From positions 124,001-188,000 of IMG/VR virus record IMGVR_UViG_3300044731_002337: a stretch of DNA of 64,000 nt. The stretch is one strand, 5' to 3'. Position numbers and translations under genes: made by a program. The notes below the pieces were generated by a model, which saw nothing but the letters and a program-made list of their open reading frames with translations, was not told the origin of the DNA and ran no database searches. Below are positions 1,830 to 62,300 of the stretch, piece after piece (position 1 is the stretch's first letter; every line of letters starts with the position of its first letter).

Positions 1830-1895
1830 GCCGTGTCTGTTTTTTTTCTTATGTTATGAGATATGACAAAAAAAAATTGGGATCGGAAATATTTT

Positions 1896-7812: not shown

Positions 7813-8103
7813 ATGGCGTCGATGAGTCCGTACATGATTGCAGGCATAACTATTGCTTGTATTTTCTTTACAGTGTTTGTAGTAATGTGGTATAAGCGCC
7901 GGCTCATTTTCAAAGCAGTCGAGGCCAAGATTGATTTTAGTGATATTAGTTCTAAAGAGGAAGATATTTATCCAGATCGAGCTAAAGGTATGGTTCTACT
8001 CTTTGCAGGTATTGCATGCATGTGTGGATTTTTCATCTTTTTCGTCGTACAACAAAAGAGTGGTTTTATTAATGGTAACAATAAGAGTTCTTTAGAATTT
8101 TAA
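7813..8103 (+). CDS. Small two-TM membrane protein
   Basis: MASMSPYMIAGITIACIFFTVFVVMW and a second hydrophobic segment; A-rich ATG context at 7813. Confidence 0.6.
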   Translation: MASMSPYMIAGITIACIFFTVFVVMWYKRRLIFKAVEAKIDFSDISSKEEDIYPDRAKGMVLLFAGIACMCGFFIFFVVQQKSGFINGNNKSSLEF

Positions 8104-22779: not shown

Positions 22780-25700
22780 TTATGATGAGCAAGTATTGCA
22801 AACAACTGGTGTAGTAAAATTGAATTTGGTGGGCTTATCAATGGTGCGGAAATAGTAGCTGGCTGTTTTGAGGCCAAGATTCCAAGCAAAGCACCAGTAC
22901 TTGACAACTTCGATCGCCATATTCTCTCCACGTTTCATGTAGACATTGAGACTGATACTTTGGTCGACAAAACGAGAGCGATCGGCAGCCATGAGAGTAA
23001 TTTGGGCAAGTGGGATATCTACAATGGATCGGTAACGTTTCTTAATGTAATCCGGAATGGAAGCAATGTCGGTGAGTGATCCATTATTCGCTAGAATTTC
23101 ATCGTGAACAGGAATGGTAGATTTGGCATCAAATTTCCAAAGACCTGCTTCTTTGAGATCTCGTACCAGGTATTTGTTGAAGACATTGTATTCTCCAGTG
23201 TTCATGTATCGTTTGAAGCTACAGGCCAGGGCAGGTTCAAAGCATTCAAAGTTTCCTAAAATGATGGAAGTACCTGCAGTGGGCATATGAGCCATTAACA
23301 GGGAGTTGAGCATTTTGTTGGGTTTGGTCTTGATATCATGACGTAATTGGTCCCAGTTCCATCCGACACTTGTAGTAATATAGTCATGATGGGGTCTCTT
23401 TTCATAAATCTTTTGAGCCTGATTGTATTTGTCCCATAAATCTTGTTGTAAAATACCGGATTCAATGGGTGATCCAGCGATACTAGGATAATTGCCCCGT
23501 TCTTGAGCCAGGTCATGGGAACCTTTTAGGGCGGCATAATACATGGTTTCAGCGATTTGATAATTGAGACGTTGTGCTTCTTTTGAATCAAAGTCGAGTT
23601 TGAGGATCATAAACACATCTGCGAGTCCTTGAATGCCAATGCCAATAGGTCGATGTCTCATGTTGGAACGCCTTGTAGATTCCAGGGGATAAAAATTGAG
23701 GTCAATGACTTGGTTCATATGGTACACTAGATTATATACCACTTCATACAATTCTTGAAAATCGTATTGATCATCATGGATAAATGCCTTGAGGGAAACG
23801 GAGCACAAATTACAAACCGCGGTTTCTTCTGGTGAAGAGTATTCAATGATTTCTGTGCATAGATTAGATGATTTGATGGTACCGAGATTTTTTTGGTTGG
23901 ATTTGTGGTTACAGTGATCTTTGAATAGGATGTAAGGTCCGCCGGATTCGACTTGTGATTTGACAATGGCGAGGACAAACTCTCGAATGGGAACTTGTGC
24001 TTCATAGAGCCCTTGTGATTCATACTGGAGGTAGAGTTGTTCAAAAGCTTCACCATGCACGTCATCTAGCCCTCGACACTTTTGAGGGTTCATGAGGGAC
24101 CATACTTGTGGTTGATTGTGTTGATAATCTAGAATGATACGTTTCATGAACAAGTCGTTAACCCATAGAGCATAGAATAGGTCAGTAGCTGAAATGGTAT
24201 TGGCGGTCAAGGGGGATTTCAATTCTAAGAATTCCAAAACATCTGCATGCCATGGTTCTAGATAGACTGCAATGCTTCCTTTACGTTTACCACCACCATT
24301 ATGAGCGACCATACAGGATGTGACATAGGATGGGTCGGAGGACCTTTCCATTTCCAGGTCGAAGCAGTCATCAATGGTGGGTGGGCTGTGAATTACATTG
24401 TGAATAGGTAGACAGAGGTAGTTTTGGACTTGTATGCATGGTGTGAGGCGGCGACCATCTTGATCCTTGGGTGGCCATATCATACGGTATTCATTAGGAT
24501 AAATCTCCTCAATCAGAGCAAAAGAATATCCAAGTCGGTTAGCACAATATTCCAACGAATGCTTCTTTTGGGGGGAAACATTCTTTAACGTGGGACCTTG
24601 AAGTTCAAGACCTTCCATGAAATCGGCGACTTGGTCTAAGGGGGCGAATAGAATGGAGGCAGGAATGTCTTGTCGATTACATTGAAGTAGACCCATTAAT
24701 TGACCTTCAGGGATAATGATTTCCGTAGTGGAAAGACAGCGAACAGATACAATGGAAGATAACCAGGTTCGATCAATGTCTGGGCTTAGGAGGTGAAAGG
24801 TGATGAGTCCTTCTTGACATTGCCAGTTCATATCTGCGGTGATGAGGCCCAAGAGTTTTAAGAGATTTGAGTCGACATCAGGGATTCGTTTTTGGAGTTC
24901 AATGGTGTTGCAAATAGCGAGCCAGTGTTTGCGGGGATCGATTTCGTGGATGGTGGTGTAAAAGGGGAGAGCTCTTGATCCAAAGGTGTTGTCAATGACG
25001 AGAATAGGGTGAGAATCGGTGATGCCATGTGATACACGGTGATTAGGGAAAACTAAATGGTGGAATTGGAGTGATTTCTTGGTGGAAATAATTTTCTGAA
25101 TATGGTGAAAGTCTCCAAAACGGTTCATGACAAGATCATTGACTTGTAAGGATTGAATTTTGCGCCAACCAGTGGAAGTCATGACCCGGGTATCACCTTG
25201 AAAGCATTGGTCGACATAGCATGCTACAGAGTTATACACTTTGAGCATGGGTCCTACACCTCCAGTGACTCCATTAGTACCCTTGATATACGAATTCTTG
25301 CTACGGGTATTGTGGATGTTGATGCCAATGCCACCCGAGTGTTTGGAGATGATGCTACATTGCTTCCATCGATCAGCAATACCTTCAATGGAATCATCCC
25401 CAGCATATAAGAGAAAACATGAACTCATTTGGGGATGCATGGTTCCCGCGTTAAAGAGAGTAGGTGTAGCCATGATACATTTGCCCAGAGATAAATAATG
25501 ATACAACTGTATAGCTCTCTTGGTATTCATAGGGTTCAGGGCAATCGCTATTCTCATCCACATAAATTGTGGTTCCTCCAAAGGTACTGACACCATGATA
25601 TGCTGCCCATTATGTTCTACTCGCTTGTAAGTGTTGAGAAGGTATTTGCCATTAATAAGTTGGGTAATCGCCGCACAGTCAAATATAATGTTTCGATCAT

Positions 25701-26124
25701 GGTCAATTGTGGCTTCAATGAGGTCCATGTCAGGAATGTGTTCAAATGATTCGTGTAAGAGTGGTGACAACTCTCCCGTGCGTGGATTCACATTAGCGCG
25801 TGCTAGTCGAACATATTCTTTAAACGAATTTGGGGTGGATTTCTGGAGATTGGAGACTATAATTTGGCCGGCAAAGAGGTTATTGTCTGCAAAATAAGTA
25901 TCATGGGCGGCAACATTCGCAGATATAGTATCGAGTTCAGAGGTGGAAATGCCATCTGTAATTTGGTCAACTGTAGCACGGCATATTTTGAAAATTGACA
26001 CATCAATGGGACGTTTTAAGATACGGGTCATATGATCACGTATCGAGTTAAGACGTGCAGTAATTCGTTGAGGATCAATGGGTTCTTTTGTTCCATCACG
26101 GGTAGTAACACATCGAGGTTCCAT
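22780..26124 (-). CDS. nrdA: Ribonucleotide reductase large (alpha/R1) subunit, class Ia, containing an intein
   Basis: N-terminal ATP cone, ATPTLFNAG, MSSCFLL, GGIG, KGTNG, YVDQ/GGGKRKG, LEPWH, SNLCTEI, RPIGIGIQG, MPTAGTS, DQSIS, C-terminal CxxC. Confidence 0.97.
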   Translation of the reverse strand: MEPRCVTTRDGTKEPIDPQRITARLNSIRDHMTRILKRPIDVSIFKICRATVDQITDGISTSELDTISANVAAHDTYFADNNLFAGQIIVSNLQKSTPNSFKEYVRLARANVNPRTGELSPLLHESFEHIPDMDLIEATIDHDRNIIFDCAAITQLINGKYLLNTYKRVEHNGQHIMVSVPLEEPQFMWMRIAIALNPMNTKRAIQLYHYLSLGKCIMATPTLFNAGTMHPQMSSCFLLYAGDDSIEGIADRWKQCSIISKHSGGIGINIHNTRSKNSYIKGTNGVTGGVGPMLKVYNSVACYVDQCFQGDTRVMTSTGWRKIQSLQVNDLVMNRFGDFHHIQKIISTKKSLQFHHLVFPNHRVSHGITDSHPILVIDNTFGSRALPFYTTIHEIDPRKHWLAICNTIELQKRIPDVDSNLLKLLGLITADMNWQCQEGLITFHLLSPDIDRTWLSSIVSVRCLSTTEIIIPEGQLMGLLQCNRQDIPASILFAPLDQVADFMEGLELQGPTLKNVSPQKKHSLEYCANRLGYSFALIEEIYPNEYRMIWPPKDQDGRRLTPCIQVQNYLCLPIHNVIHSPPTIDDCFDLEMERSSDPSYVTSCMVAHNGGGKRKGSIAVYLEPWHADVLEFLELKSPLTANTISATDLFYALWVNDLFMKRIILDYQHNQPQVWSLMNPQKCRGLDDVHGEAFEQLYLQYESQGLYEAQVPIREFVLAIVKSQVESGGPYILFKDHCNHKSNQKNLGTIKSSNLCTEIIEYSSPEETAVCNLCSVSLKAFIHDDQYDFQELYEVVYNLVYHMNQVIDLNFYPLESTRRSNMRHRPIGIGIQGLADVFMILKLDFDSKEAQRLNYQIAETMYYAALKGSHDLAQERGNYPSIAGSPIESGILQQDLWDKYNQAQKIYEKRPHHDYITTSVGWNWDQLRHDIKTKPNKMLNSLLMAHMPTAGTSIILGNFECFEPALACSFKRYMNTGEYNVFNKYLVRDLKEAGLWKFDAKSTIPVHDEILANNGSLTDIASIPDYIKKRYRSIVDIPLAQITLMAADRSRFVDQSISLNVYMKRGENMAIEVVKYWCFAWNLGLKTASYYFRTIDKPTKFNFTTPVVCNTCSS
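24298..25206 (-). mobile_element. Intein (303 aa) with degenerate LAGLIDADG domain; C-extein +1 residue is Gly
   Basis: Starts CFQGDTRVMT, ends CFDLEM...CMVAHN; removal gives seamless YVDQ-GGGKRKGS; blocks LLGLITADM and FMEGLELQG are eroded LAGLIDADG motifs. Confidence 0.92.
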
Positions 26125-29436: not shown

Positions 29437-30582
29437 ATGTCGGATTATTGTTCGACGCCACAGCCAAGCCATGAAGAGGTCGTGGCTAAGAATACACCGG
29501 ATTATTTTCGCACATTAGAGCAACATCGTACGAATGATACGATCTATGTAGCAGTGAAATATGTATTTATTCAGCAGCATCCAACTGAGCAATTACCATT
29601 ATATCTAGTGCAAGCGAATCATGATCAATTGAATCAGAGTTTTTTGGGTAAGAATGTGCAGGAGATAGATACTTTACCGAATACGAGTAAACAGCCATGG
29701 AAGGATCTAGTAGCAGTAGCGAATATTCAATTTTTACCGTTGAAGAGTAGTGAAGTGACATTGGAGGTATTGACTACGAATAAGGTATTGGATAATCAGA
29801 ATCCATTGAATGATTGTGTGGAGATAGCGTGTAGTCATGATAATATAATTAATGTGTATTTTGCCAAGTTGAGTGGGCAGACGAGTACGTTGGGAATAGC
29901 GAGGTTAGCGTCCAATATTATATTTTGTGATATGCGAACTGTGGGGAGTATAGCTGTCCCAGGAATGATGACTGGATATAGTCTGGGTAAAGTATTGGTA
30001 CATGAAATGGGGCATGCATTAGGGTTGTATCATACATTTTCGGATGCGACTAATCGTTGTGATAATCATAAACGGTATCCGGACATTCCAGAGCAATTGA
30101 GTCCAAATTTTGTAGCATCGGTGGAATACCGTGGTGGTCAATGGGTTCAAGTGAATGATAACCGTGATCGTGAACTCGCCGGTGAATCAGATATTCGCTC
30201 ATGTGCAAAAGTTGTTGGACAAATTGATGGCCAGTTAAGTGAACAAGCAGTCAATTATATGGATTATGCACGCGATCCAGATTCACGAATGTTTACTCAA
30301 AGTCAAGTTGATGTTATGCGAGCCCATTTAGTGAAGCATTCCAATTATACTCGAGAATCTGGTGTGACCACTACGAATACCACTGCAGCACAATCCGCCA
30401 TTCCCGAAGATTGTCATGATGATACCAGTGACTCGAGTGGACTATCAACTGCTGCCATTGTTGGCATTGTCATTGCTGCGGCGACTCTATTAGTTATCAT
30501 CATTGGATTCTTGATATGGAGAAATTATTATCAAGCTCCGATTCGAGAAGAGTTGAGAAATGTAAAACAACAAGAAAGATGA
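29437..30582 (+). CDS. Pappalysin/M43-family zinc metalloprotease, type-I membrane protein
   Basis: HEMGHALGLYHTF, Met-turn NYMDY, MFTQSQVDVMR, C-terminal TM. Confidence 0.9.
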   Translation: MSDYCSTPQPSHEEVVAKNTPDYFRTLEQHRTNDTIYVAVKYVFIQQHPTEQLPLYLVQANHDQLNQSFLGKNVQEIDTLPNTSKQPWKDLVAVANIQFLPLKSSEVTLEVLTTNKVLDNQNPLNDCVEIACSHDNIINVYFAKLSGQTSTLGIARLASNIIFCDMRTVGSIAVPGMMTGYSLGKVLVHEMGHALGLYHTFSDATNRCDNHKRYPDIPEQLSPNFVASVEYRGGQWVQVNDNRDRELAGESDIRSCAKVVGQIDGQLSEQAVNYMDYARDPDSRMFTQSQVDVMRAHLVKHSNYTRESGVTTTNTTAAQSAIPEDCHDDTSDSSGLSTAAIVGIVIAAATLLVIIIGFLIWRNYYQAPIREELRNVKQQER

Positions 30583-31623
30583 GTTGTAATGCATCTCAGA
30601 CATTGGTCCATGCGTGTCGATTCATGGAATGTTTAATGGAAAAAAATGGTGTTAGTAAACAAGAGGTGAAGCATATGTACTCATCTGGACAAGAATGTGC
30701 ATTCTTATATCATCCCAAGATTAGTGTGATATTGTTTCGCCCTGATGATCCTACAACAACAACTTATTTAAAAATGAGTGTGTTAGATCCAGTATTCATT
30801 CCTACCGATACAGTGATTGAACAAGGGAAGAAGAAAACAGAAATACAAACCTCCAACTTAACTGAATCAGTGTGGAAACATTTTAGGGTATTTATTCTTT
30901 TTTTTTTGTCTTTCTCTTGTTTGTTTGTTTAATGTTATGATAGGCTACGTATCCTCTTGTGAAACGATGGATTATGGTCTCCTCAGACATTAATACATTT
31001 ACCAATACTCTATTACTAGAACTAATGTGGATGTCTGAATCAATGTCTATGCAACACTTTAAGTACATTGAATTGGGAGATCCTCGAATTATTACTGAAC
31101 ACAAGTTTCAACCATTGAGTGTGGAAAGAGTGGATAAGGCTCCAACTGAAAACTGTCGACAAATTCTAGTGCATGATATCTTTGCACGATTTTATGGAGC
31201 ACAAGTAGGGCATGTATTGAAATGTCAAGGTATCCATAGACAATCTGGTGAACAAACAGATTATTTACAGGTATATTTTTTTTCGTTTACATGTACTTTA
31301 CAGCTTATACTATGTTTTAGGTATCTTATATTCATTACATTAAAGGAAATAAGTTGAAACCAGCAAAACTTCCAGAACAAGCAAAACAGGAAAGTATTGT
31401 GTTGGAAGAAGAGGAAGAGGAGGATGAGGAACTGGAAGAAGAAGAAGAAGAAGAGGAGGAAGATGAAATAGAGGAAGTACAAGTAGAGGAAGAAACATCA
31501 GAGTCTGAAACTGAATCGGAAGAGGAATCGGAATCCGAGTCTGAGGATGAAGAGGAAGATGAAGATGATTCTGAATCGGATGAGGAGGACGAAGAGGATG
31601 ATGATGATGATGATGAGCAATAA
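30579..31623 (+). CDS. rpb5: RNA polymerase subunit RPB5 homolog with acidic C-terminal tail; three exons join(30579..30887,30944..31270,31321..31623)
   Basis: RPB5 C-domain ITEHKFQP...QILVHDIFARFYGAQVGHVLKC...YLQV; three track ORFs join in frame (939 nt) after removing two GT-AG introns. Confidence 0.8.
30888..30943 (+). other. Spliceosomal-type intron 1 of RPB5 (56 nt, phase 0)
   Basis: AGG|GTATTT...T-rich...TTTAAT...GATAG|GCT; splicing joins WKHFR to ATYPLVKRWIM in the frame of ORF 30959. Confidence 0.8.
31271..31320 (+). other. Spliceosomal-type intron 2 of RPB5 (50 nt, phase 0)
   Basis: CAG|GTATAT...TTTTAG|GTA; joins DYLQ to VSYIHYIKGNKLKPAK in the frame of acidic ORF 31354. Confidence 0.7.
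31405..31616 (+). repeat. Poly-Glu/Asp low-complexity coding repeat
   Basis: GAA/GAG/GAT runs. Confidence 0.9.
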
Positions 31624-36507: not shown

Positions 36508-37830
36508 TTAGGAATATAAATCCGGAAGTATTGGAATCGTATTGTACAAAGTAATAAAAAGTGCAAAGGTAAATAGTGTAGTTACTATAATCGTAAACCC
36601 ATTTGAATTGGTTTTTTCTGCTTCTGCTTCTTCTTGTGTTGATGATAAAAGTGAGGAAGTTATAGTTTTCAATTCATGTAGTATTTCATCGCATCGATGG
36701 GCTACCTCTTCGATTGAACAAGAAGTTACCTGCTCATTGATAGTTGTATTTATGGTATCCATACAGGTATTGTGAAGAGTGAGTATGACTCCATGTTGCG
36801 CCTTGAGACATTGTGTCAGTTCATTGTAGTGACGGGTACATTGGGCTAATATAGTTTGCTGTAATGCGTCAATGTGTCGTTGTTGTATTTGATTATTGTC
36901 TTGAAGATCCATTTGCCCCATAATTCGTTGAACAGTATTGTCATGATATAAAGTCATTTGTTGTTGCAACTCTGAACTAATGAAATGTTGGAGTTCTTGA
37001 TAATCTTTTTCGAGTCCATCGCAAAGACGTGTACCCAATTCCTCAGTTGTATTCTGCATAGCTGTGATAATATCCTCCTTACATGTAACACCATGATCCA
37101 TAAACGTATTGTGGAGCTTATCACTCTCTAACATAAATGTATTCTGAAGCAAAGTCGTCACATGATGGTGAAATTTGTCAAGTTGTCGTTTGTCATGTAA
37201 AAACCATTCTTCCTTGGAAGGTAAATGGGCAAATAATTCTTCCTTCGAAGGTAAATGGGTAAACAATTCTTCCTTGGTGGGTAAGCTGCGTGACAGATCA
37301 TCTTTAGAAGGTAAATGGCGAAATATTTCATCACGATAGGGTAATTGGCGAATCACATCTTCCTTTGTGGGCAGGTGTTTTACAATATCTTGTTTGGTTG
37401 GTAAACGGTTTTGTATTGTTGCTTCTGTTTTGGATAAGAATTCTTCCTTGGTTGGTAATAGGTGGTGAGAGGGAAGGTGAGCCATTATTTCATCCCGTGT
37501 TGGAAAATGATTAAGAATTTCTTGCTTCATTGGTAGTTGACTCACTAGCTCTTCCTTGGAGGGTAATCGATTAAGTATCTCTTCTCTGGTAGGTAAATGA
37601 GAGGTGAATTCTAGCTTGGAGGGTAATCGATTAAGTATCTCTTCTCTGGTAGGTAAACGTTGTAATAACTCTTCCTTGGTAGGTTCATCTTTGGAAAGGT
37701 GGTGTTTCTTAGGCTTGGGATGTTTCTTATGTTCATGGCAAGGATGTTGAGAGAGACAAGAGGTTGGACTAGGTAGAATAAATGATTCATTCGTACCATG
37801 GTTGTTAGGTAGTTGCTTGTGTTTATTCAT
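36508..37830 (-). CDS. Membrane-anchored protein with tandem 11-aa LP(T/S)KEE repeats
   Basis: More than a dozen LP(T/S)(K/R)(E/D)E-type units; C-terminal TM FTIIVTTLFTFALFITLY. Confidence 0.75.
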   Translation of the reverse strand: MNKHKQLPNNHGTNESFILPSPTSCLSQHPCHEHKKHPKPKKHHLSKDEPTKEELLQRLPTREEILNRLPSKLEFTSHLPTREEILNRLPSKEELVSQLPMKQEILNHFPTRDEIMAHLPSHHLLPTKEEFLSKTEATIQNRLPTKQDIVKHLPTKEDVIRQLPYRDEIFRHLPSKDDLSRSLPTKEELFTHLPSKEELFAHLPSKEEWFLHDKRQLDKFHHHVTTLLQNTFMLESDKLHNTFMDHGVTCKEDIITAMQNTTEELGTRLCDGLEKDYQELQHFISSELQQQMTLYHDNTVQRIMGQMDLQDNNQIQQRHIDALQQTILAQCTRHYNELTQCLKAQHGVILTLHNTCMDTINTTINEQVTSCSIEEVAHRCDEILHELKTITSSLLSSTQEEAEAEKTNSNGFTIIVTTLFTFALFITLYNTIPILPDLYS

Positions 37831-38028: not shown

Positions 38029-38980
38029 TCATTGGATTACGGGAAAGGGAAGTAGTTCATTCACAGAAATATTTTCAGCAATGGCGATAATGGTGTCTGT
38101 AACTTGTTTCCATGTAAAAGGTAGTGATTGTGAGGGACCAGAAATGATCCATTGTGCATCACGGTATTCGCATGCCACAACAGCATTCTTGGGGAGAGGA
38201 TAAGGACAAATAGCGGCCGAAATGATGACATTATCTTTGGATTTGAGTAGATAGTCGCCTTGATAGAAGCGGTAGTATTGTACTGTCGAAGGAGTTCCAT
38301 CAGGCCAAGGTAATTCTCGAATCGATTCAAATGGTTGAATAGTACAATAAATGCGATGTGATCGTAATCGTAATTGGGGTATTACTTTAGATCCGTATGA
38401 TGATGAAGAAGAAGAAGAAGAAGATAATGCTTCAGATGAAGTATCCATGAAATCCAAGGCTTCAATAGGTAGCATGTAGGTAAATTTTAGAATATGACTC
38501 ATTTCCACTAGTGGTTTGACATGAAGTCCAAAGGGAATTTCAGGATGATGCACTACCTTATTATACAATGTGGGGTAAAGTGATGATTTCACTACGCAAG
38601 GGGATACAGAGATGGAGGTAGTTGAAGCAGTAGGACATTTCGAGATCATTTGAATGGCTTGAATGGCTAATTCCCATCGTTGATCGTACCTGAGATGTTT
38701 GGCAGGGTTTCCACACATCATATAACAATCCATAATCGTAAAGCAAAATCCTTGGTCGTTAAGTTGAACCATTTCTCCATCGAGTACGGTTCCAGCAAAT
38801 AATGGGATAGGTAGTTTGGAAGGCATATGTTTCAGTTTGGTGGTCTTCTTTTGTTGATCCATGAGAAAGAGTTGTATGCAGTTCTTGTATGTGGTGAATA
38901 ATAATAGCCCGCGGATACCATTTAAGTAAGGTACCATGACATAACGTTGAGGTTGGAATTCGAGTTTCTTGGGTCGAAAG
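38029..38980 (-). other. Degenerate mRNA-capping guanylyltransferase plus OB domain fused to RPB1
   Basis: YVMVPYLNGIR (motif I KxDG changed to YLNG), TVLDGEMV (III), FTIMDCYMMCG (IIIa), YDQRW, VVACEY...W, TIIAIAENISVNELL. Confidence 0.75.
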
Positions 38981-41900
38981 GGGATTACATCTTGAATCAT
39001 TTGAAAGTGATAGCCACTACCAAGACCCATATTCTTATTGCACATGGCAGCAGCTGCAATAGTATTCCCTGGATCCCACCTTCCCATATCTACATTTTCC
39101 ATAACGTGTCTAGATGACTCTTCAAACGAGGCTTGCTGCATAGGTGCAATACGTTTGGCAGCTTCATTCTTCTTGTATCCTTCATGTATACCAGTCATGG
39201 TCATGTATCGAGCCATGAGTTCCAAGTGTCGTGCATCAGTAGAATCTCCCATGACTAACACGAATTCATGGGTCAACACTTGGGTTGTGGCATAAACGCC
39301 CATAAACTTTTGGGTATCGCCGGTATGAGTGCTGTACGATTGCTGAACATCGACTAATGGGTGCGTATTCCAAATTGAAAAATCAGATTGGTCCGTAATG
39401 CATACCCAGCGATTTGAAGCTTGTTGTTCAATAATATACTTGGAGATGCCATCCAATTTACCCCTCACAATGGTTTGGTGAAAGATATTGTAAGCGACGC
39501 CGTACAGGGCATGTGTGGTTGGATTCTTGACCTTGCACTTGATTTGTCTCAAGGCGAAAGTCCAAATGCCCACGGAAGGTGTTAAACGAATACAAAATAG
39601 GGTCTTGTCTACTTTGTGAATCGCGGAAATGGGAATTTGGATGGTATGGTGTAATGCGAGAATGATATTGTAGTCTTGTACCAAATAATATGCTTTGAGC
39701 TTCGGGTCAATATGGAGGCGGATAGTCATACTTGATTCATCAATCTTAGGGTAGTCAGAGAGGATTTCAGAGAGATATACAGTTCTCCAGGTCATGGCCG
39801 TATAATGGACTTCAGCTTCCGTGACATGAGGTAGAAAGACAATATTCATCATGGCTAGGCTATTATTGGCATCAATCAAGTTATTCAATTTGTTGACTCC
39901 TGTAACTTGCGTATTCTTTTTCCCAGAGGAGTGAGGCGACTTTAAATTACCTTGTGTGTATACTTCTCCCACACTATGAGTCGCATTCATTCCAATAGCT
40001 TCTCCTGGCAAAATGGTTCTTCTTTGTATCGTATGGTAAATCAATCGAAGTAACTTGTACCAGGCAACACTAGACAACTTCCATACCACCAATACATTAT
40101 GAGGGCAGCACCACACACGTAATAAAACATGAAGCTTGTGGTGTTGGGCAGGAACAAGTCTCTCCTTGACCATACTTTGCCAGATATAGGTAAACGACGT
40201 AATGATTTCGGTTTCCATAAGATCAGGTGATGAAGTATAAGTGGTGGCTTGTTGAAAGAGATGCTTGATATGAAAGGGAGATTTGAATGTCAAGTCTTGA
40301 TCCTTGATTTTATCCCAAAGTAACCATGACTCACGATAGAATACATGATGATGATGATTAGGCCAAAGTTCTAGAGTTGGCGGTGTAATTGTTTCCCATA
40401 CCAAGTATTGAGGGTCAAGAGAATCACCTCCATAAGTAAACCAAACGGTTGGACCAGGTTTATGGATATCTTCTTTGCGAAAGGCATGTTGTCTTCGATT
40501 GCCAGAATAACTGTCTACTGCATGGCCAAAAGTGTCTGCAATAATACCCATATTACAATAGGCCATCTTCTTCTCCAAGTAGCCTGATTGTGAAGTACCC
40601 TTGATCTTGTTGATCACTGATTCCGTGGTAGGTTGTGCTTGGGTCATTAGATCATGAAAAGTGAGACCCATAGCATAAGGATGTTTGATAAAGCCATGCG
40701 CTACAAGTGATTTGTCGTGAGGGTGGAAATGGCTAGTCACATTAGGAATTCGTTCATGTGTGAGATACGCTTGTCCCACAACACCCATCATTTGAGATAA
40801 GGATGCCCAATTTGCCTTGGTGCCACTTTGAATCATAGCCAAGTATCCATTGTGTAACGTATTTCGATCCCTTGCTGTTACCAACTCTTCAATCCGATCT
40901 TGAATCGACTTGGTGTAAAACTGAATGTGCTGTCCAACTACATCTTCAGGTTGCTCCTGCATATTTTGAAGCTTGTGATAATTGGGACATGAATCCGCAT
41001 CTTCCCAATACATTTGGTGATAGCTACAAGAGTGTCCACGCATGTCTAGATATTCTTGGGTGATTAGATAGCCTTCATACAGGAAATCCATGGCTTCATC
41101 GAGGGAATGGTACATGATGATATCTCTAAGGACGCCATTGAGAACTTTTTCCGTAAACACGGTATGAATGTGAATGGAGCTAGGTAGGATACAATGCATC
41201 ACTTGTCTCCCGGTCCATAATTGGCGAGGTTTCCAAACTGCAGGTGGAGGTATGGTGATGAACCGAGTCACATGTCCTAGTAACACCGAGACTTGATCCT
41301 TGGTCAAAAATGTATCTTCATGGGTCAATAAAAAAGCGCCAATCACTGGATTTTGACTGAATTTAATCCATAGTCCTCCATCTTTCATGGTGTGAAACTT
41401 GACCGCCATAATCTCCATCACCTCTGCCCGAGCTTCAATGGTTTGAGGAATGTGTACACTTAGTTCATCGCCATCACAATCCGCATTAAAAGGTAAAAAA
41501 ACACTCACGTGAAGATTAATGACAAACGAATTGGGAATCACTTTGACTTTGAATCCCATAGTCGATCCACGATGGAGTGTTGGTGCTCGATTCACAATCA
41601 CCCAATCATCCTCCAAAATGTGACGACGAACATAAGCCACGTCATGCACGTTAATGTCGCGACGGTTATCATAGTATTCCAAATCAATGGTGCGTCCATC
41701 CTTCATTTGCATGGAATTGGCGCCAGGATAGTGATGTGGGCCATTCAAAATCCATTTGTGAGCTTGGTTCATGTTGAAGGAAGATACGGGGACGTTAATG
41801 GTCAGTCCCATACATGTGGATTGCGGGAGGCCACAGTAAGTAGGGTGAATCCATGTACAACCTTCCAATACAAGTCGTGCATAATGATATTTTCGCCACG

Positions 41901-43109
41901 CCACAATAAAGCCTTGCATACGGCTACTTTGTTTCGATTTGCTAGTCTTCTTAAACTTGGTATCCACTGAATTGGGGGTTTTACCATATTGGGCATTCTT
42001 GGGGATTAGTTTGCGATACTTTTCAAAGTGGAATGCAGAGATTTGGTTTTGGAGGTTTCGCCAGGCACATTGATTGGTCACGTTGCCACAAGACGCTTCA
42101 TTGGAAAGTTTACATTTGCTCAGTTTCTGGTTAATGAGTTGAAGCTGGGCCCGGTATTGTTGCCGTTGTTGAATATTGAGTTGTTTTCGTTCTTCGCTGG
42201 TTAAGGATTCTTTTTGAAAGCAAACTTTAAAATCTGGATGAATGAATCCCTTGTATAGATATTGGGAAAGAATAATGGGGTCCTTGGATTGTTGCAATTT
42301 CATTTCGAGTAAAAGTTTGCTTTGGAGGACATTTTTGAGCATCTTGGTCCAATCATTGGGGTATTGTTTAGAGCCATTTTTGGTAGGGAAAGTACTATTA
42401 GGTCTAGTGGTGAGTGCCGGGACAGCTAGAGCCGAAAACATTCGAGCCTTGGGTAAGTTGTATTGTCCAAGTCCCATAATATGCATCATTTGTTCATTCT
42501 TCGAAATGTCCTCCAAGAGTTTTTGAATTTCAAATGGACCAAACGAAATGGGCTTCCATGATGGATTGGATTGGTAAAGTTGAAAATCAGTCTTGGAAAG
42601 TGTTACAACTCCCCGTATAATATTATCATGACCCGATTCTGTTGTCCATTTGATATAGGATTTACCACATTCACATGCCCTGAAGAAACGAGTATATTTA
42701 AGTAACGTATTGAGTCGTTTTTCAGAGGGTAGTTGAAGAACTTTCTCGCACATATGGGAAGTAATGCGGAGGCGTTGACAATAAAAGCAAACTAGATTGA
42801 GTATTTTCAAAAGGGTTGACATGGCGCCTACATGGAAACAGGGAATAGGTAATTCCATATGTCCAGTATGTCCAGGACAATTATGGGTTGTCTCTCCACA
42901 TTGCTCACATAATGAATCCCATGATTTACATCCCAAAACACCTACAAGAAGAAAAGTAAAGAAAGATCAAAGGGCGAAAAAAAAAATGTACCTGAAGTAA
43001 GATCTGTATTGGTTTTGATTTCTAATACACTTTGTTTACGAACACGATCCGAGTCAATAAGGAAACATTGTAATGCATCTACTTCACGTAATGGTGGAAG
43101 TGAATCCAT
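38029..43109 (-). CDS. rpb1: RNA polymerase largest subunit (RPB1) with fused C-terminal guanylyltransferase-like domain; exons complement(join(38029..42941,42992..43109))
   Basis: CEQC...CPGHTGH, CFYC, NRAPTLH, FNADCDGDE, GTSQSGYLEKK, PGEAIG, EVYTQGNLKSPHSSG, LGSGYHF; exon 1 supplies RVRKQSVLEI; spliced length 5031 nt is in frame; an upstream in-frame ATG at 43178 is possible. Confidence 0.93.
42942..42991 (-). other. Spliceosomal-type intron in RPB1 (50 nt, phase 1)
   Basis: CAG|GTACAT...polypyrimidine...TTGTAG|GTG; joins TDLTSG to VLGCKSWDSLCEQC. Confidence 0.85.
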
Positions 43110-43161
43110 TGTGATTACATTACTTTTATTATGTTGGTTTTTTTCGGATCGGAATCTTGAG

Positions 43162-43419
43162 TTATTTGGTAATGACAACTGTAGTGCGTGGTGATTTGGT
43201 GAACCAATCTTTGATAGAGGTAAGAATTTGTACGGAATATTTGATGAGGATAAAGGCTACACGAACAAAGATGAGAAAGGATAGTAGGGCAATAATGACG
43301 ATCAGATATGTTTTGTAATTGGTTTCAGGGGGTGTTGGATTTGGATTGGTTGAAAGGTTTTGTAAAAAGGCTTCATCTAGTTTAGCTAATTCTTCTGGCG
43401 TTGGAGATTTCAAAGACAT
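43162..43419 (-). CDS. Small single-TM protein
   Basis: 85 aa with a TM (YLIVIIALLSFLIFVRVAFILI). Confidence 0.6.
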   Translation of the reverse strand: MSLKSPTPEELAKLDEAFLQNLSTNPNPTPPETNYKTYLIVIIALLSFLIFVRVAFILIKYSVQILTSIKDWFTKSPRTTVVITK

Positions 43420-43485
43420 TTCTCTTTTTTTTTTATTTTACTTTGCTTATGGTTTTTTTTTTCTCCGATAGGGGATAGAATCATA

Positions 43486-49804: not shown

Positions 49805-51783
49805 ATGGATAACAATATATGTCCTGTTTGTTCAATTCAATGTGCCAATGTCGAGTCATTTCGTGACCATGTAGCCCATGAACATGAAGACTATAAACAT
49901 TTTGCATGTGAATTGCATATTGCGGAACAACCTTGCAAGGCTAGATACAAGTATAAGAAGGATCTACTCATTCATCAAAAGAAAGTGATTCATGATCAAG
50001 TGAGGCAATATGTATCTCCAGCGTATCATCAACTAAGATTAAGGACAAAACATGCTACGTCATGGGTGCATTGGACCTCATTGTATGTTCAATATAAATC
50101 TCCCAGTGATCCGGTATTGTCGAATGAGCAAAAAATGTCAGTGGAGCAGTTGATGAGTAGGCTGAAGCAGGAGGAGATGTGGGTGGAAGAAGCAGTTTAT
50201 GATTCATGGCAATTTGAAGAAATGGTGGAGCAATTGGAGAATTATTGGAATCAGGCCAAGACAATTGGAAATCAATTACGTCTATTATTTTGGCATGTCC
50301 TGTATAAGTTCTGTGTGGATCCTTTACTTTCGGATTCGGTGGTTCATTTTTTACACAAGAGGTCCAGTAAATATTTTATCAAGGCGACCAAAATTGTGCA
50401 AGGATCATTAGGTGTACAAATCATGGACCCTTATCAAATGGTGGAACTACGTTATCGAATCTTGGTAGAACTTCAAAAGCAACAGCAAGAAGTATTGGAT
50501 CCATTTATTCTTCAATACTATCGTGAGAGATCATCTAAGATGCCATTACTCGAGTTTGGATTGAAATTAAGGTGTTGGATAGATTTGATGATTCGGTTTA
50601 CCAATATTCCTATGAGAATTCAAGCGACCAAGGAACTTCATTTAGGGTATCCGTTTCGAAAGACGGATGTGGCCGAACATCATGTGGCAAGATTATTATA
50701 TGAGAATGGTGTCTTTACCCGTTTATTCATGTTTGATAAAGTGGGCAAAACAGGTAAGCATTAATGATTTTTTTGTTTGTTTGTTTGTTGTTAACTATGC
50801 ACAAAAAAGGTGCTCATCGTCCAATTCGATGTCCTTTACCAGGATTTATAACTCCTTACTTATTATTCTACATTAAGTATTGTCGACCAACGGAAAAGGA
50901 GAATTCCTTGGTATTTCTCAATGCGACGGGCAGTGCATGGAAACAAGCATCAAGGGATATTAAGATGTATATGCAAGATGTATTGGACATTCAAGTGAAT
51001 GCATTAGATCCTTCAGGTCGTTTTGTTCATGGGTCAAGGTCTATCATGTTGGCGAATTATGCATTGCGTGTACGATTTGATCCATTGAAGTTACAACAAT
51101 TTGCTACCTTGATGAGACATTCGTTTGCGACGATGAATTCTTATTACTTGTTATGGACGGATTGGGCGACAGCGAGACTTGCCATGTCCGACTTTAATCA
51201 AGCGTTTGGTTTATCTGCCCCCGAAGAAAAACCATGTGATTTTTCAGCCTTTGATGTCCATTTTTCTTTCACTCAGGGTATAATGGAAGAAAAAGAAGTA
51301 TCGCCACAGATTGAAACATTATCATGTAAACCTGCAGTAAATTCTCGTTCATTCGAAGAGGTAACATCGTCATTCGAAGAGGTAACTTCTGGTTCATTTG
51401 AAGGGGTAACATCGTCATGCAAACCTTTGGTAACTTCTGGTTCATTTGAAGGGGTAACATCGTCATGCAAACCTTTGGTAACTTCTGGTTCATTCGAAGA
51501 GGTAACATTGTCATGCAAACCTGCGGAAACATCGTCATGCAAACCTGCGGTACAAGAGCAAAAGAGTGGAAATGGTTGTGACAAGTGTGGTAAAGTAATG
51601 ACGATTTATGGTCCTTATGGGAAGAGGAAGCATGTGAAGCAATATGGATGTTATTGGTATGAATGTAAGGATTGTGAGTTGAAGAAATGGATACCATTAG
51701 GATATATGACGGAATATAGTCATTCACGAAAATCCAAGAATCACGATAAGATTATGGCATTTATTAAAGCTTCTTTGAAATAA
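49805..51783 (+). CDS. C2H2 zinc finger plus tyrosine-recombinase-like protein; exons join(49805..50753,50810..51783)
   Basis: N-terminal CPVC...HVAHEH and C...HQKKVIH; TNIPMR, DK, HGSR, MRH and SYY give the R-K-H-R-H-Y set; two track ORFs join in frame (1923 nt). Confidence 0.7.
50754..50809 (+). other. Spliceosomal-type intron (56 nt, phase 1)
   Basis: CAG|GTAAGC...TTAAC branch-like...AAAAG|GTG; the spliced product DKVGKTGAHRPIRCPL aligns with the intronless paralog DDKNMNSHLPIIVPV. Confidence 0.85.
51314..51550 (+). repeat. Tandem array of 48-bp GGTAAC-family units and sub-units inside the CDS
   Basis: VTSGSFEGVTSSCKPL repeats with degenerate flanking copies. Confidence 0.9.
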
Positions 51784-59326: not shown

Positions 59327-62300
59327 ATGGATGAGGAACAGTGCCATATATTGCGTAAGGAGTTGTTGCAATTATGGATTCAAAAGATAGGATTTCAAAC
59401 TGATGAAGCACAAAATTATGATTCGGGGCTTGAATCTGTGTTGGAAATGTTGAAGGAGTTGTTGGTGGTATCTGAAGTGCACAATGGGGAGAAGCATGAA
59501 ATTAAGTTGGCAAATTGTTATTTTGTACGCCCATATGAGAATGGTGTAGGATTGGATACGCCATTAAAAGCCTTGTTACATGGAAGTTATGATGCGTTGA
59601 TAAAGGGTGATTTCTTGTATTCCAAGTATGGTGAAGGAGGACAATTATTATTTCAAAACAAGATTACGGGATATACGATATGTGAATTTCCAGTCATGTT
59701 GGGGTCAGTGTTGGATCATCAATCTACAGGGTTGACTTCAGCGCAAATCTATCACAAGCGTTATCTCAAGTCATCATGTTTCATAAGCAACATGCATGTA
59801 CGAATATTCCCAGCAGAAGAGTTTATTGTGAATAACCGGATATTGCATCGGCCGGCAAATGGATCTGAAGTGAGATCGACGTTTTTCTTTGGGGAGAGAC
59901 GATACCGTACGAATAGTACATTGCAAATAGGCTGGAAACTCAAGAATAACAAGGGTATTAAGTGGTGGCGAGAATATCCTAGATTGGAGATTAAGGTGCC
60001 GTACGAAAATCCTCCCATATTTATTTCCTTGATGGTGGTGGTGATGGGCTTAGGATATATAGTGGAGGAGTTTGTGGAATGGATTGCTCGGTTTCGACGT
60101 GTACCTGCTTCGACCAAGACACTCTCCTTACAACAAGTCGTTTTATCTGATGTCTGTGGATGCCAAAATTCGTATGATGCCTTGCTATTGATTGCCAAGT
60201 TGTTCAAGAGGACACATAAGATTAATTTGGACCAGGACAAGGCAGAGTCAGCCAAGGAAATCTTGAGACGGGAGATATTACCGCATTTAACGCACTATTC
60301 TCAAAGTACCAATGAAGCGGTATTGTTATGGGAAAGACGACGCAAGATGGTGATGTTCGCTATGATTGTGGCTGATATATTTGATCGTATGGATGGAAAG
60401 AGTTCGAATGTGAATAGCCGAAGTTACAAGTTTATTCGGTTCAAAACACCTATTCAATTCATGTTGGAGTTGATGAGGAAGAATGTGAAGAATGCTTGTA
60501 CGGTAGCCAAGGCGAAATTGCAGCATATGTTGAATAACAAGTTGCCCATTTTGTTGCATTACATGTTGCAGCCATCGATGTTTGAATTGACAACGGCGAT
60601 TAAGAATGGTAATTTTAATCCTTCGGGGAGGAAGAATACCAAGTCGAGTACGCACAATACGGGCAAGACGGATGTTATTACGTTGGGATATTGTTCTGAT
60701 TCCTATCCGGAGCAAACTGGCAAGATTATTAAGAAGCCAACGCAACAGTGTCATGATTTGAAGGCGAATGTATCTGATCCGTCGCAAGTAGGGTATGTTT
60801 GTATGTACATGACCCCTCAAAGTAAGCATTGTGGTGTATTTCGTCACAAGGCTATGGGAGCTCGATTTTCCCCAAATGTGAATATGATCAAACTGCAACA
60901 ACAATTGGAGCGTTTGGTTGGAGAATGGATTGTTGACGACTATGTTCATGGTGCCTGTGTCATGTATGACGTCTTTGGTGGATTCATGGGCTGGATATTG
61001 AATCCTCGAGAGTTTTGTGGTTACCTGATTGAAAAGAGACGACAAGGTTTATGGTATCGTCATGGAAATATTGAGTATATTGAGGAGGAGAACCAGATAT
61101 GGTGTAATGTAGGGGGTGATCGATTGGTACGGCCATTGATTGTTGCTTCAGCTTGGCCCAAGTTATGTCATGGTTTGGATCGATATCGTTTACAATTTTC
61201 CTTGTTGCAACAAGAGGGGATTATTGAATGGTTGGATCCGAATGAGGAGCAATGTGGATTGGTCAAGGTGGCAGCTACATTTGAGGAAATTATGGATCCA
61301 TTAGGTGGATATACTCATATTGAGATTCATGTATCATTGGTATTGGCAGTGAATATGACTCGAGCGTTTTTCAATTACAATTCGGGTCCACGAGAATTAT
61401 ATACTGGATTAATGAATACCAAAGCGTTATCCACCAAGTTACCAGACATTGGGGCTACCAAGTCTCATATGGTGTATGGTCAGCAATTCCCTTTAATGTC
61501 TGATCCTGTGACGGAGGCGTTAGGGAATCGAGCGCGTGAGCCAAACGGGACGAATGTGACAATTGCAATCATGCCTGCCCATGGGAATATGGAGGATTCA
61601 GTAGAGTTTTCTCAAGGATGTGTGGATTTAGGGATGTTCATGTCGGTGCAACATAACATGGAGCTGGTGGTGAGGAATGAAGAGTGTGAGATTCGCAAAC
61701 CGGATGCTCGATGTGAGTTGAAGAGTAGTGAACATGCGTATCGACATTTGGATGATAATGGCATTGTGAAGATTGGATCCCAGTTGGAAGTTGGTGATGC
61801 GATTGTAGGGATGGTGAATATGAAGAAGCGTAAAAGGTTACGATGTGTAAGTCAATTTCTAACCTCTGGAACGGGTGGTCGAGTTACGGATATCAAGACT
61901 TATATGGATGATAAGAAAAAGATCAAAATAGTGCATGTGACGTATGTATCAGCTCACAATCCAACGGTAGGGGACAAGTTTTTCATTGGACATGGACAAA
62001 AATTTACGGTGGCTCGAATGGTGAGACGAGAAGATATGCCATTTAATCCTATGACGGGGATGAGTCCAGATTTGTTATTCAATCCTCATAGTTTAACTCG
62101 ATCCACTATGGGGATGTTATTGGATATACTTTTCAGCAAAGGGAGGACATTGGAGCCAGAGTTGATTGATGCGTTTGATACGGTGATGTTACATCCGGAG
62201 TTGCATAAGAAGAAGTTACGGAAGGTGGAGGAAGTGTTATTGCGTCATGGATTTTCGATAAGTGGTACAGAGATGATGTGTAATGGGAAAACGGGTGAGA

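What the first reader, a model, noticed from the sequence alone, without database searches (positions are those of the whole stretch)
42942..42991. Intron hides the true N-terminus of RPB1
The track RPB1 starts at a TTG lacking the conserved N-terminal segment. ORF 42942..43178 supplies it (DSDRVRKQSVLEI, compare SPEEIRKMSVxEI) and then runs into a poly-pyrimidine tract. Removing the 50-nt GT-AG segment gives ...TSG-VLGCKSWDSLCEQC...CPGHTGH in frame. This is the strongest homology-supported intron in the window.
Basis: partly seen in the sequence, partly recalled or inferred. Interest (0 to 1): 0.7.

Follow-up and report, generated by a model that had tools for sequence, protein, structure and literature searches.

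The report
Short intron splits giant-virus RPB1 gene
A 50-base GT...AG intron interrupts the gene for the largest RNA polymerase subunit of an uncultured lake giant virus, so automatic annotation lost the first 41 amino acids; introns of this type are already known from other giant viruses.

Summary
On the minus strand, exon 1 (43109..42992, ATG to ...TCA G) and exon 2 (42941..38029) are separated by exactly 50 nt (42991..42942). This segment starts GTACAT, is 80% pyrimidine and ends TTGTAG. Removing it gives a 1676-aa RPB1.

- **Orthologues:** the N-terminus is gap-free collinear with three intron-less orthologues (about 72% identical over the full length).
- **Distant profile:** it also aligns to a profile built only from distant relatives. 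The score rises by 54 bits, and exon 1 alone scores 32 bits.
- **Real DNA:** the 50 nt are present in other lake metagenomes. A diverged strain has 2 SNPs in the intron, while coding SNPs are 20 synonymous to 2 non-synonymous.
- **Alternatives excluded:** stops in both frames rule out read-through or slippage at the T-run. The region has no RNA structure and no Rfam hit.
- **More introns:** the same genome holds at least six more of this class (44-56 nt, GT...TAG). Two are in an Rpb5 homologue inside the window and four in a clamp-loader gene.

The most likely mechanism is host spliceosomal splicing, which implies a nuclear step in making the virus's own polymerase. This is a new member of a known kind (pandoraviruses, molliviruses, chloroviruses, mirusviruses).

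The parts
42992..43109 (-). RPB1 exon 1: ATG 43109..43107, 39 codons plus the first base of the split Gly codon (MDSLPPLREV...TDLTSG)
   Evidence: Sequence and translation. 83% identical to residues 1-42 of intron-less orthologue P0004 by tblastn. Scores 32 bits on positions 6-44 of the distant-family profile. The strain SNP at 43098 is synonymous in this frame.
42942..42991 (-). Intron: 50 nt, phase 1, GTACAT...TTGTAG, 80% pyrimidine, T10 run at 42977..42986
   Evidence: Clean 50-nt insertion relative to L001 and L002; absent in L008. Present without gaps in contigs from other lake metagenomes (X3 record 42922..43302, X6 record 42776..43011). No intron-less DNA form seen.
38029..42941 (-). 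RPB1 exon 2, from the last two bases of the split Gly codon to the stop: Pfam Rpb1 domains 1 (from profile position 51) to 5, plus a C-terminal capping-enzyme-like domain
   Evidence: Pfam. 72% identity to P0004 residues 37-1662 in one HSP. 19 of 21 strain SNPs are synonymous.
42986..42994 (-). 5' splice site CAG|GTACAT
   Evidence: Sequence. Same pattern (AG|GTAYWT followed by a T run) in the other validated introns.
42956..42961 (-). Candidate branch-point motif CTTTAC (A at 42957, 15 nt before the 3' splice site); a second candidate is TTGAT with A at 42967
   Evidence: Sequence only. YTNAY-like motifs occur in all validated introns, but are expected by chance in T-rich sequence, so this is inferred and not tested.
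42942..42944 (-). TAG: both the 3' splice-site trinucleotide and the in-frame stop that ends read-through from exon 1
   Evidence: Translation. All 7 validated introns end in TAG.
42967..42969 (-). TGA stop in the exon-2 frame inside the intron, downstream of the T10 run
   Evidence: It rules out joining the two frames by polymerase or ribosome slippage on the T run.
38644..38949 (-). C-terminal mRNA-capping-enzyme (guanylyltransferase)-like domain fused to RPB1, residues about 1330-1431 of the ORF
   Evidence: Weak Pfam PF01331 hit. The domain is shared by about 20 metagenomic relatives. The KxDG motif is replaced by YLNG here.
30579..31623 (+). Rpb5 (RPABC1) homologue with three exons (30579..30887, 30944..31270, 31321..31623) and two introns of the same class (30888..30943, 56 nt; 31271..31320, 50 nt; both phase 0)
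   Evidence: Gap-free collinearity at both junctions with the intron-less orthologues L001:21522-22490(-) and L002:12456-13469(-) and with P0127 and P0128. For a model of the L001 orthologue, the 15 best Foldseek hits are Rpb5 chains of Pol I-V and the ASFV polymerase. Weak Pfam Rpb5_C hit.

Best explanation
The 50 nt at 42991..42942 (minus strand) are a short U2-type (GT-AG) spliceosomal intron in the RPB1 gene of an uncultured giant dsDNA virus from lake water.

Proposed mechanism:
- The primary transcript starts upstream of ATG 43109.
- The host spliceosome pairs with CAG|GTACAT, uses a branch A in the T/C-rich tract (probably CTTTAC, 15 nt upstream of the acceptor) and joins to TTGTAG|GT.
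- The spliced mRNA encodes a 1676-aa RPB1 whose first 40 residues come from exon 1.
- Unspliced RNA can only give a 55-aa peptide, or an RPB1 lacking its N-terminus.

So production of the virus's own polymerase depends on splicing, and therefore on access to the host nucleus, at least for these genes.

The intron belongs to a small class in this genome (44-56 nt, GT...TAG, T-rich). The class is also found in the Rpb5 homologue and a clamp-loader gene. The RPB1 and Rpb5 introns are absent from the nearest relatives, so they are lineage-specific (most simply gained here; loss in the relatives is not excluded).

Shown: the sequence anatomy, collinearity, presence in DNA of several samples, and purifying selection. 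Inferred: actual removal from RNA, the spliceosome as the agent, and the nuclear step.
For: 1. Precise 50-nt insertion relative to three intron-less orthologues, with frame restoration.
2. The spliced protein gains 54 bits against a profile of distant relatives and aligns through the junction without a gap. The Pfam domain-1 start moves from profile position 51 to about 11 by transitivity with P0004.
3. Canonical GT...AG, an exon context of AG|G at both ends, a pyrimidine tract and no internal AG.
4. Six more introns with the same signature are validated by orthologues or by restored conserved motifs. Two are in Rpb5. Four are in the clamp loader, restoring GPPGTGKTS, NASDENGID and LDEADG and aligning contiguously to a homologue in L065.
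5. It is not an artefact or decay. The intron is present in contigs of independent metagenomes, including a diverged strain. SNPs are 20 synonymous to 2 non-synonymous in the spliced frame.
6. No fold (z = +1.65) and no Rfam family, so it is not a self-splicing intron.
7. Stops in both frames inside the intron exclude read-through and T-run slippage.
8. Precedent: spliceosomal introns in pandoraviruses, Mollivirus, chloroviruses, mirusviruses and punuivirus, where they are tied to nuclear expression (PMC5995976, PMC4801854, PMC12768974, bioRxiv 10.64898/2026.10.09.758095).
Against: - No RNA evidence: no RNA run holding the sequence was listed, so splicing itself is unobserved.
- The virus encodes its own multisubunit polymerase with a fused capping-enzyme-like domain, which is usually read as a sign of cytoplasmic transcription, where no spliceosome is available.
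- The branch-point motif is not statistically distinguishable from chance.
- Genome-wide counts of GT...AG or T-rich candidates are not enriched over control motifs. The class is defined by a handful of validated cases, not by a statistical signal.
- The host is unknown, so its intron signature cannot be compared.
Confidence: 0.85

Rival explanations
1. The record is an endogenised or latent giant-virus element inside a protist genome, and the introns are host-type introns acquired after integration. The intron would still be real, but it would reflect a host-like or latent expression programme, or incipient assimilation, rather than a lytic virus.
For: Introns in endogenous nucleocytoviruses are documented, and in punuivirus they mark host-transcribed latency genes (bioRxiv 10.64898/2026.10.09.758095; PMC12768974 discussion). 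CheckV rates the record only 55% complete and finds no end repeats.
Against: Coding density is 89% with intact long ORFs. SNPs are 20 synonymous to 2 non-synonymous. The 295-kb contig has a uniform, unusual GC skew throughout. The intron-bearing genes are core polymerase and replication genes, not accessory ones. No eukaryotic flanks were seen, although the ends were not examined gene by gene.
Confidence: 0.1
2. There is no splicing: the gene is split or damaged. RPB1 is made from an internal start in exon 2 (TTG 42936 or ATG 42858), and the upstream ORF is a separate small peptide or a relic.
For: Public gene calls model it this way (P0002, 1635 aa). Split largest subunits exist in archaea and cyanobacteria (background knowledge).
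Against: The break falls inside Rpb1 domain 1. The first ATG of exon 2 lies after the CxxC...CPGH zinc motif. Exon 1 remains conserved, and its only SNP is synonymous. The same GT...TAG segments separate clamp-loader exons of only 53-83 nt, which cannot be independent polypeptides.
Confidence: 0.04
3. Ribosomes bypass the 50 nt by translational hopping, as in phage T4 gene 60. Peptidyl-tRNA-Gly would take off from GGT 42992..42990 and land on GGT 42942..42940, exactly 50 nt downstream, giving the same protein.
For: Matched GGT codons lie 50 nt apart, the same gap length as in T4 gene 60 (sequence; T4 facts from background knowledge).
Against: - No stop codon follows the take-off codon; the next codon is ACA.
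- There is no stem-loop (z = +1.65).
- The matched codons are a by-product of the AG|GT...AG|GT splice-site context.
- Hopping fails for Rpb5 intron 1: landing on the matching AGG would enter the wrong frame compared with the orthologues.
- It is implausible for four successive gaps in one clamp-loader gene.
Confidence: 0.01
4. The 50 nt are an assembly or sequencing artefact.
For: The sequence is low-complexity and T-rich, with a T10 run.
Against: The whole intron is present, without gaps, in contigs of other runs and studies. X2 covers 46 nt of it. X3 covers it with two SNPs. X6 covers it in full. X4 begins inside it. No joined form was seen in 8 runs.
Confidence: 0.01

Closest known systems
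Spliceosomal introns of Pandoraviridae and Mollivirus sibericum (PMC5995976, PMC4801854)
   Same: GT-AG introns in protein-coding genes of giant viruses that also encode their own multisubunit RNA polymerase. There are few introns per gene. They are taken as evidence that some transcripts are processed in the host nucleus.
   Different: Those introns are validated by RNA-seq, affect 4-13% of genes and occur in 60% GC genomes of Acanthamoeba viruses. Here there is no RNA evidence, the genome is 38% GC and from an isolated uncultured lineage, the introns are only 44-56 nt and always end in TAG, and at least 7 are validated in 295 kb.
Intron-poor mirusviruses (Demutovirales) and the 'evolutionary trap' model (PMC12768974)
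   Same: Low intron density: at least 0.024 per kb here, against 0.042 per kb there. GT-AG introns sit in a virus that keeps its own replication and transcription genes. The introns lie in presumably early, informational genes.
   Different: Mirusviruses belong to Duplodnaviria (HK97 capsid). This genome has an A32-type packaging ATPase. Mirusvirus intron lengths peak near 80 nt. No intron-encoded genes are possible in 50 nt.
Punuivirus (Chlamydomonas endogenous giant virus) intron-bearing latency genes (bioRxiv 10.64898/2026.10.09.758095)
   Same: Viral genes carry host-type spliceosomal introns whose features mirror those of the host's introns.
   Different: The mean intron is 176 nt, the virus is integrated and the introns are enriched in latency genes. 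Here they are in polymerase and clamp-loader genes, and integration is not shown.
Group I self-splicing introns in RPB1/RPB2 of Pithovirus and mimiviruses (PMC4801854)
   Same: The same gene, the largest RNA polymerase subunit, is interrupted.
   Different: Those are ribozymes hundreds of nt long. This segment is 50 nt, unstructured and has no Rfam match.
T4 gene 60 translational bypass
   Same: A 50-nt coding gap between matched Gly codons.
   Different: There is no stop after the take-off codon, no hairpin, and it does not generalise to the other gaps in this genome. See the rival explanations.

Membership tests
U2-type (GT-AG) spliceosomal intron | GT at the 5' end and AG at the 3' end of the removed segment | tested here: met
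   GTACAT...TTGTAG. All 7 validated introns in the genome are GT...TAG.
U2-type (GT-AG) spliceosomal intron | Precise removal restores one continuous reading frame collinear with intron-less homologues | tested here: met
U2-type (GT-AG) spliceosomal intron | Polypyrimidine tract before the 3' splice site | tested here: met
   80% pyrimidine overall; the last 30 nt are almost all T or C.
U2-type (GT-AG) spliceosomal intron | Branch-point sequence 10-40 nt upstream of the acceptor | tested here: inconclusive
   CTTTAC at -15 and TTGAT at -25. YTNAY-like motifs are present in all the introns, but are expected by chance in such a composition.
U2-type (GT-AG) spliceosomal intron | Absent from mature mRNA | not testable with these tools
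   No RNA run was listed. Only DNA contigs could be laid.
U2-type (GT-AG) spliceosomal intron | Not a self-splicing ribozyme (group I/II) or bulge-helix-bulge intron | tested here: met
   50 nt long. MFE -11.2 kcal/mol against a shuffle mean of -15.4 (z = +1.65). No Rfam intron family at E <= 1.
Introner / transposon-generated intron family | Several near-identical intron copies in one genome | tested here: not met
   blastn-short of each intron against the genome finds only itself plus T-run matches of 22 nt or less. The AGGT repeat at both ends equals the splice-site consensus.
Programmed translational bypass (T4 gene 60 type) | Matched take-off and landing codons, a stop directly after take-off, and a stem-loop at the take-off site | tested here: not met
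   Matched GGT codons are present, but the next codon is ACA and no structure is predicted. The model fails for Rpb5 intron 1.
RPB1 (largest subunit of multisubunit RNA polymerase) | Rpb1 domains 1-5 in order, and the catalytic NADFDGD-type motif | tested here: met
   Pfam domains 1-5. NADCDGDE is present, and ADCDGDE is conserved across the family.
RPB1 (largest subunit of multisubunit RNA polymerase) | Complete N-terminal segment of domain 1 | tested here: met
   Met only after splicing: family profile positions 6-44 are covered by exon 1. Orthologue P0004 matches the Pfam profile from position 11.

The most novel reading that the evidence does not exclude
One member of a deep-branching, uncultured giant-virus clade has recently acquired a set of ultra-short (44-56 nt, GT...TAG) host-type introns in its core information genes (RPB1, Rpb5, clamp loader). 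In this clade RPB1 carries a capping-enzyme domain in place of a CTD. Its three closest sampled relatives lack the RPB1 and Rpb5 introns; the clamp-loader introns could not be checked in them. If so, the virus can no longer make its own polymerase without the host spliceosome. That would be the 'evolutionary trap' toward nuclear dependence caught at an early stage in a nucleocytovirus-like lineage, and the intron signature could be used to identify the unknown host.
Probability: 0.4. Interest if true: 0.6.

Novelty: new member of a known kind. Interest (0 to 1): 0.5.

Why it matters
- **Annotation.** Prokaryote-style gene callers truncate or fragment the intron-bearing genes of this virus. Public entries P0002, P0129 and P0130 are such fragments. 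RPB1 is a standard phylogenetic marker for giant viruses, so the error propagates.
- **Biology.** Introns in the genes for the virus's own polymerase subunits and clamp loader imply that these mRNAs need the host spliceosome. A nuclear phase is therefore likely, despite a self-encoded transcription apparatus.
- **Evolution.** Relatives about 72% identical in RPB1 lack the RPB1 and Rpb5 introns. This gives a clean presence/absence contrast in a virus, most simply explained by recent gain.
- **Host prediction.** The narrow length range and the GT...TAG signature should mirror the host's introns, offering a handle on the host of an uncultured lineage.

Tried and rejected
- **RNA evidence:** a search for RNA runs listed none. 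Both read-laying runs could therefore use only DNA contigs.
- **Genome-wide intron finding without homology failed:**
  - GT...AG pyrimidine-rich ORF-joining candidates were not enriched over control dinucleotide pairs.
  - The donor-motif plus T-richness count was not above that for reversed sequence.
  - A codon-usage log-odds scan did not discriminate and missed the validated introns.
- **ORF-poor gaps:** listing them gave useful leads, such as the clamp loader, but also false ones. The candidate at genome 251952..251998 is a separate 86-aa HNH endonuclease ORF in front of a 1798-aa gene.
- **Unverified candidates, not counted** (all minus strand except the last):
  - genome 62355..62406
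  - genome 43467..43508
  - genome 43809..43849
  - window 7952..7999
  - genome 24616..24665 (+)
- **Searches for relatives:**
  - The search for related loci with the single RPB1 protein found nothing. The alignment query was needed to reach L008.
  - The record behind L008 is not held for the genome search.
  - The metagenome scan added no new close relative.
- **Virus classification:**
  - Capsid_NCLDV, Capsid_N and VLTF3 profiles found nothing.
  - PolB has only 5 unnamed homologues.
- **Rpb5 label:**
  - Pfam on the orthologues gave no Rpb5 hit, and the PDB sequence search found nothing.
  - Only the fold search supported the label, using a model of modest confidence (pLDDT 60).
- **Introner hypothesis:** rejected.
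- **T-run slippage:** rejected.
- **Alternative genetic code:** not indicated. TAA, TGA and TAG all end long ORFs (155, 59 and 24 times).

Full report
**What is there**

The gene lies on the minus strand. The table-11 ORF 38029..42936 starts at TTG and encodes an RPB1 of 1635 aa. Pfam finds Rpb1 domains 1-5, but domain 1 matches only from profile position 51 of 312. There is also a weak C-terminal mRNA-capping-enzyme hit.

Upstream, in another frame, ORF 42942..43178 contains an ATG at 43109 followed by MDSLPPLREVDALQCFLIDSDRVRKQSVLEIKTNTDLTSG. It then reads 16 F/S/L-rich codons and stops at TAG 42944..42942.

Between the two coding parts lie exactly 50 nt (42991..42942). They start GTACAT, then a T10 run, and end TTGTAG. 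Composition is 60% T and 20% C, and the only AG is the terminal one. Removing them joins TCA G|GT GTT in phase 1 and gives a 5031-nt CDS, 1676 aa with one terminal stop. The only correction is that exon 1 begins at ATG 43109.

**Homology test**

The window comes from a 294,773-nt IMG/VR virus record from lake water. A protein search found about 25 metagenomic relatives, most of which also carry the C-terminal capping-enzyme domain.

- The three closest relatives have an uninterrupted N-terminus. They are P0004 and P0003 on NCBI metagenome contigs (loci L001, L002) and IMG/VR locus L008. P0004 begins MESLPPLREVDALQCFLVDSERVRRQSVLEIKTNADLTSGILGCKTWDSLCEKC, collinear residue for residue with the spliced product.
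- The nucleotide alignment shows a single 50-column gap in both relatives.
- tblastn with the orthologues gives two HSPs in different frames that meet at the junction.
- A profile built only from 20 distant relatives (at most 36% identity) aligns the spliced protein from its residue 2 to profile position 6, with no gap at the junction.
  - The score rises from 1102.9 bits (TTG ORF) or 1061.7 bits (first ATG of exon 2) to 1157.3 bits.
  - Exon 1 alone scores 32 bits on positions 6-44.
- In P0004, Pfam domain 1 starts at profile position 11 with residue 17, which is the part supplied here by exon 1.

**Real DNA under selection**

Contigs from eight public lake or freshwater metagenome runs were laid on the region.

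- X1, probably the source, spans it identically.
- X2 reaches 46 nt into the intron from exon 2, and X4 starts inside it.
- An X3 contig (42922..43302) and an X6 contig (42776..43011) each contain the whole intron without gaps. Neither has the tool's 31 flanking letters on both sides: each has 20 nt on one side and more than 160 nt on the other.
- No intron-less joint was seen.

The X3/X6 strain differs by SNPs.

| Region | Variation seen |
|---|---|
| Intron | 2 SNPs |
| Spliced reading frame | 20 synonymous, 2 non-synonymous, including a synonymous change in exon 1 |
| Upstream of the ATG | Indels only |

These results exclude an assembly artefact and argue against a decaying pseudogene.

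**Other mechanisms**

- Read-through is blocked by TAG in the exon-1 frame.
- The exon-2 frame has a TGA at 42969..42967, downstream of the T10 run, so slippage on the run cannot connect the frames.
- The region is less structured than shuffled controls (z = +1.65). It matches no Rfam family, and 50 nt is too short for a ribozyme intron.
- A T4-gene-60-like hop is formally possible, because GGT codons sit exactly 50 nt apart. But it lacks the stop and the hairpin, and it does not work for the other gaps described below.
- Each intron is unique in the genome, so this is not an introner family.
- TAA, TGA and TAG all terminate long ORFs, so the standard code applies.

**A class of introns in this genome**

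- *Rpb5 homologue (inside the window).*
  - A gene at 30579..31623 (+) is split by 56 nt (30888..30943) and 50 nt (31271..31320). Both segments are GTAT...TAG and T-rich.
  - The spliced product is collinear at both junctions with the intron-less syntenic orthologues in L001 and L002, and with P0127 and P0128.
  - Public gene calls P0129 and P0130 are this genome's own fragments, reading into the introns.
  - A structure model of the orthologue has modest confidence (pLDDT 60, pTM 0.58). Its 15 best PDB matches are Rpb5 chains of Pol I-V and of the ASFV polymerase. Exon 2 gives a weak Pfam Rpb5_C hit.
- *Clamp-loader small subunit (outside the window).*
  - This gene, at genome 61862..60938 (minus), has four introns of 44-48 nt.
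  - Removing them restores GPPGTGKTS, NASDENGID and LDEADG.
  - The product aligns contiguously to a homologue in an unrelated giant-virus contig at E = 2e-22. Small alignment gaps lie close to two of the four junctions.

All seven introns start with GT, end with TAG and are 44-56 nt long. Most have AG|GTA at the donor followed by a T run. Further candidates remain unverified, and one proved false.

No other split gene was seen in the roughly 25 kb of the window that is syntenic with L001 and L002. RPB2 (59327..62758) appears complete.

**Interpretation**

The best explanation is a host-spliceosome intron (confidence about 0.85). The RPB1 and Rpb5 introns are missing in the nearest relatives, and the RPB1 site is uninterrupted in the more distant family members too. 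They are therefore lineage-specific, most simply a recent gain.

The interrupted genes encode the virus's own polymerase subunits and a replication factor. Their mRNAs must therefore reach a spliceosome. This implies a nuclear phase like that proposed for pandoraviruses, Mollivirus, intron-poor mirusviruses and punuivirus (PMC5995976, PMC4801854, PMC12768974, bioRxiv 10.64898/2026.10.09.758095).

Whether the record is a free virus or a latent or integrated element cannot be settled here. The high coding density (89%) and purifying selection favour an active virus.

**Lineage**

An A32-type ATPase, PolB, RPB1, RPB2, ribonucleotide reductase and an SNF2 helicase are present. No NCLDV capsid or VLTF3 profile match was found in this 55%-complete record. 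PolB has only five unnamed homologues. It is an isolated, uncultured giant-virus lineage.

**Verdict**

The phenomenon is known in giant viruses, so this is a new member of a known kind. Extra interest comes from the tiny uniform introns, their location in core transcription and replication genes, and their absence from close relatives.

Noticed in passing
window 30579..31623 (+): An Rpb5 (RPABC1) homologue with an acidic C-terminal tail is split by two introns of the same class (30888..30943, 56 nt; 31271..31320, 50 nt). Public gene calls fragment it (P0129, P0130).
   Followed up: yes
L003:938-1862 (-) = genome 60938..61862, outside the window: A clamp-loader (RFC small subunit-like) gene has four introns of 44-48 nt. 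Its internal exons are only 53-83 nt long. At 247 aa the product is short, so a further 3' exon may have been missed.
   Followed up: partly
L003:2355-2406 (-); L005:1467-1508 and 1809-1849 (-); L168:1616-1665 (+); window 7952..7999 (-): Further GT...TAG, T-rich segments of 41-52 nt join open frames in ORF-poor gaps. No homologues were available to validate them.
   Followed up: partly
window 38644..38949 (-), C-terminus of RPB1: RPB1 is fused to an mRNA-capping-enzyme (guanylyltransferase)-like domain where cellular RPB1 has its CTD. About 20 metagenomic relatives share this and keep the catalytic KxDG motif. This virus and its two closest relatives have YLNG, CFNG or YFNG instead, which suggests loss of the catalytic lysine.
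   Followed up: partly
whole record G000 (window = 124001..188000): The plus strand is strongly G-rich (GC skew about +0.2) across about 283 kb, regardless of gene orientation (+0.21 in plus-strand genes, +0.16 in minus-strand genes). The sign flips to about -0.2 in the last ~11 kb. No terminal inverted repeat was detected by blastn.
   Followed up: partly
window 22780..26124 (-): The ribonucleotide reductase large subunit (1114 aa) has a weak Hint-domain hit at residues 307-354, so it possibly contains an intein.
   Followed up: no
window 36508..37830 (-): A 440-aa ORF with an HNH 'homing endonuclease associated repeat' lies directly downstream of RPB1. The ORFs at that position in L001 and L002 gave no tblastn match to this genome, so this may be a mobile insertion.
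   Followed up: no
window 49805..51783 (+): Two ORFs overlap by one base (49805..50764 and 50764..51783). Together they correspond to a single 507-aa ORF in relative L001, while the N-terminal part of the first ORF matches a separate 62-aa ORF there. This points to gene fusion or fission, or a frameshift, in one of the genomes.
   Followed up: no
L167:5999-6256 (-) = genome 251999..252256: An 86-aa HNH endonuclease ORF sits just upstream of a 1798-aa ORF. It looked like an upstream exon but is probably a separate gene.
   Followed up: partly
window 43425..43462: An A/T homopolymer-rich intergenic stretch attracts unrelated metagenome contigs, seen as a depth spike and loose ends in read laying. 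This is a low-complexity artefact, not a feature.
   Followed up: no
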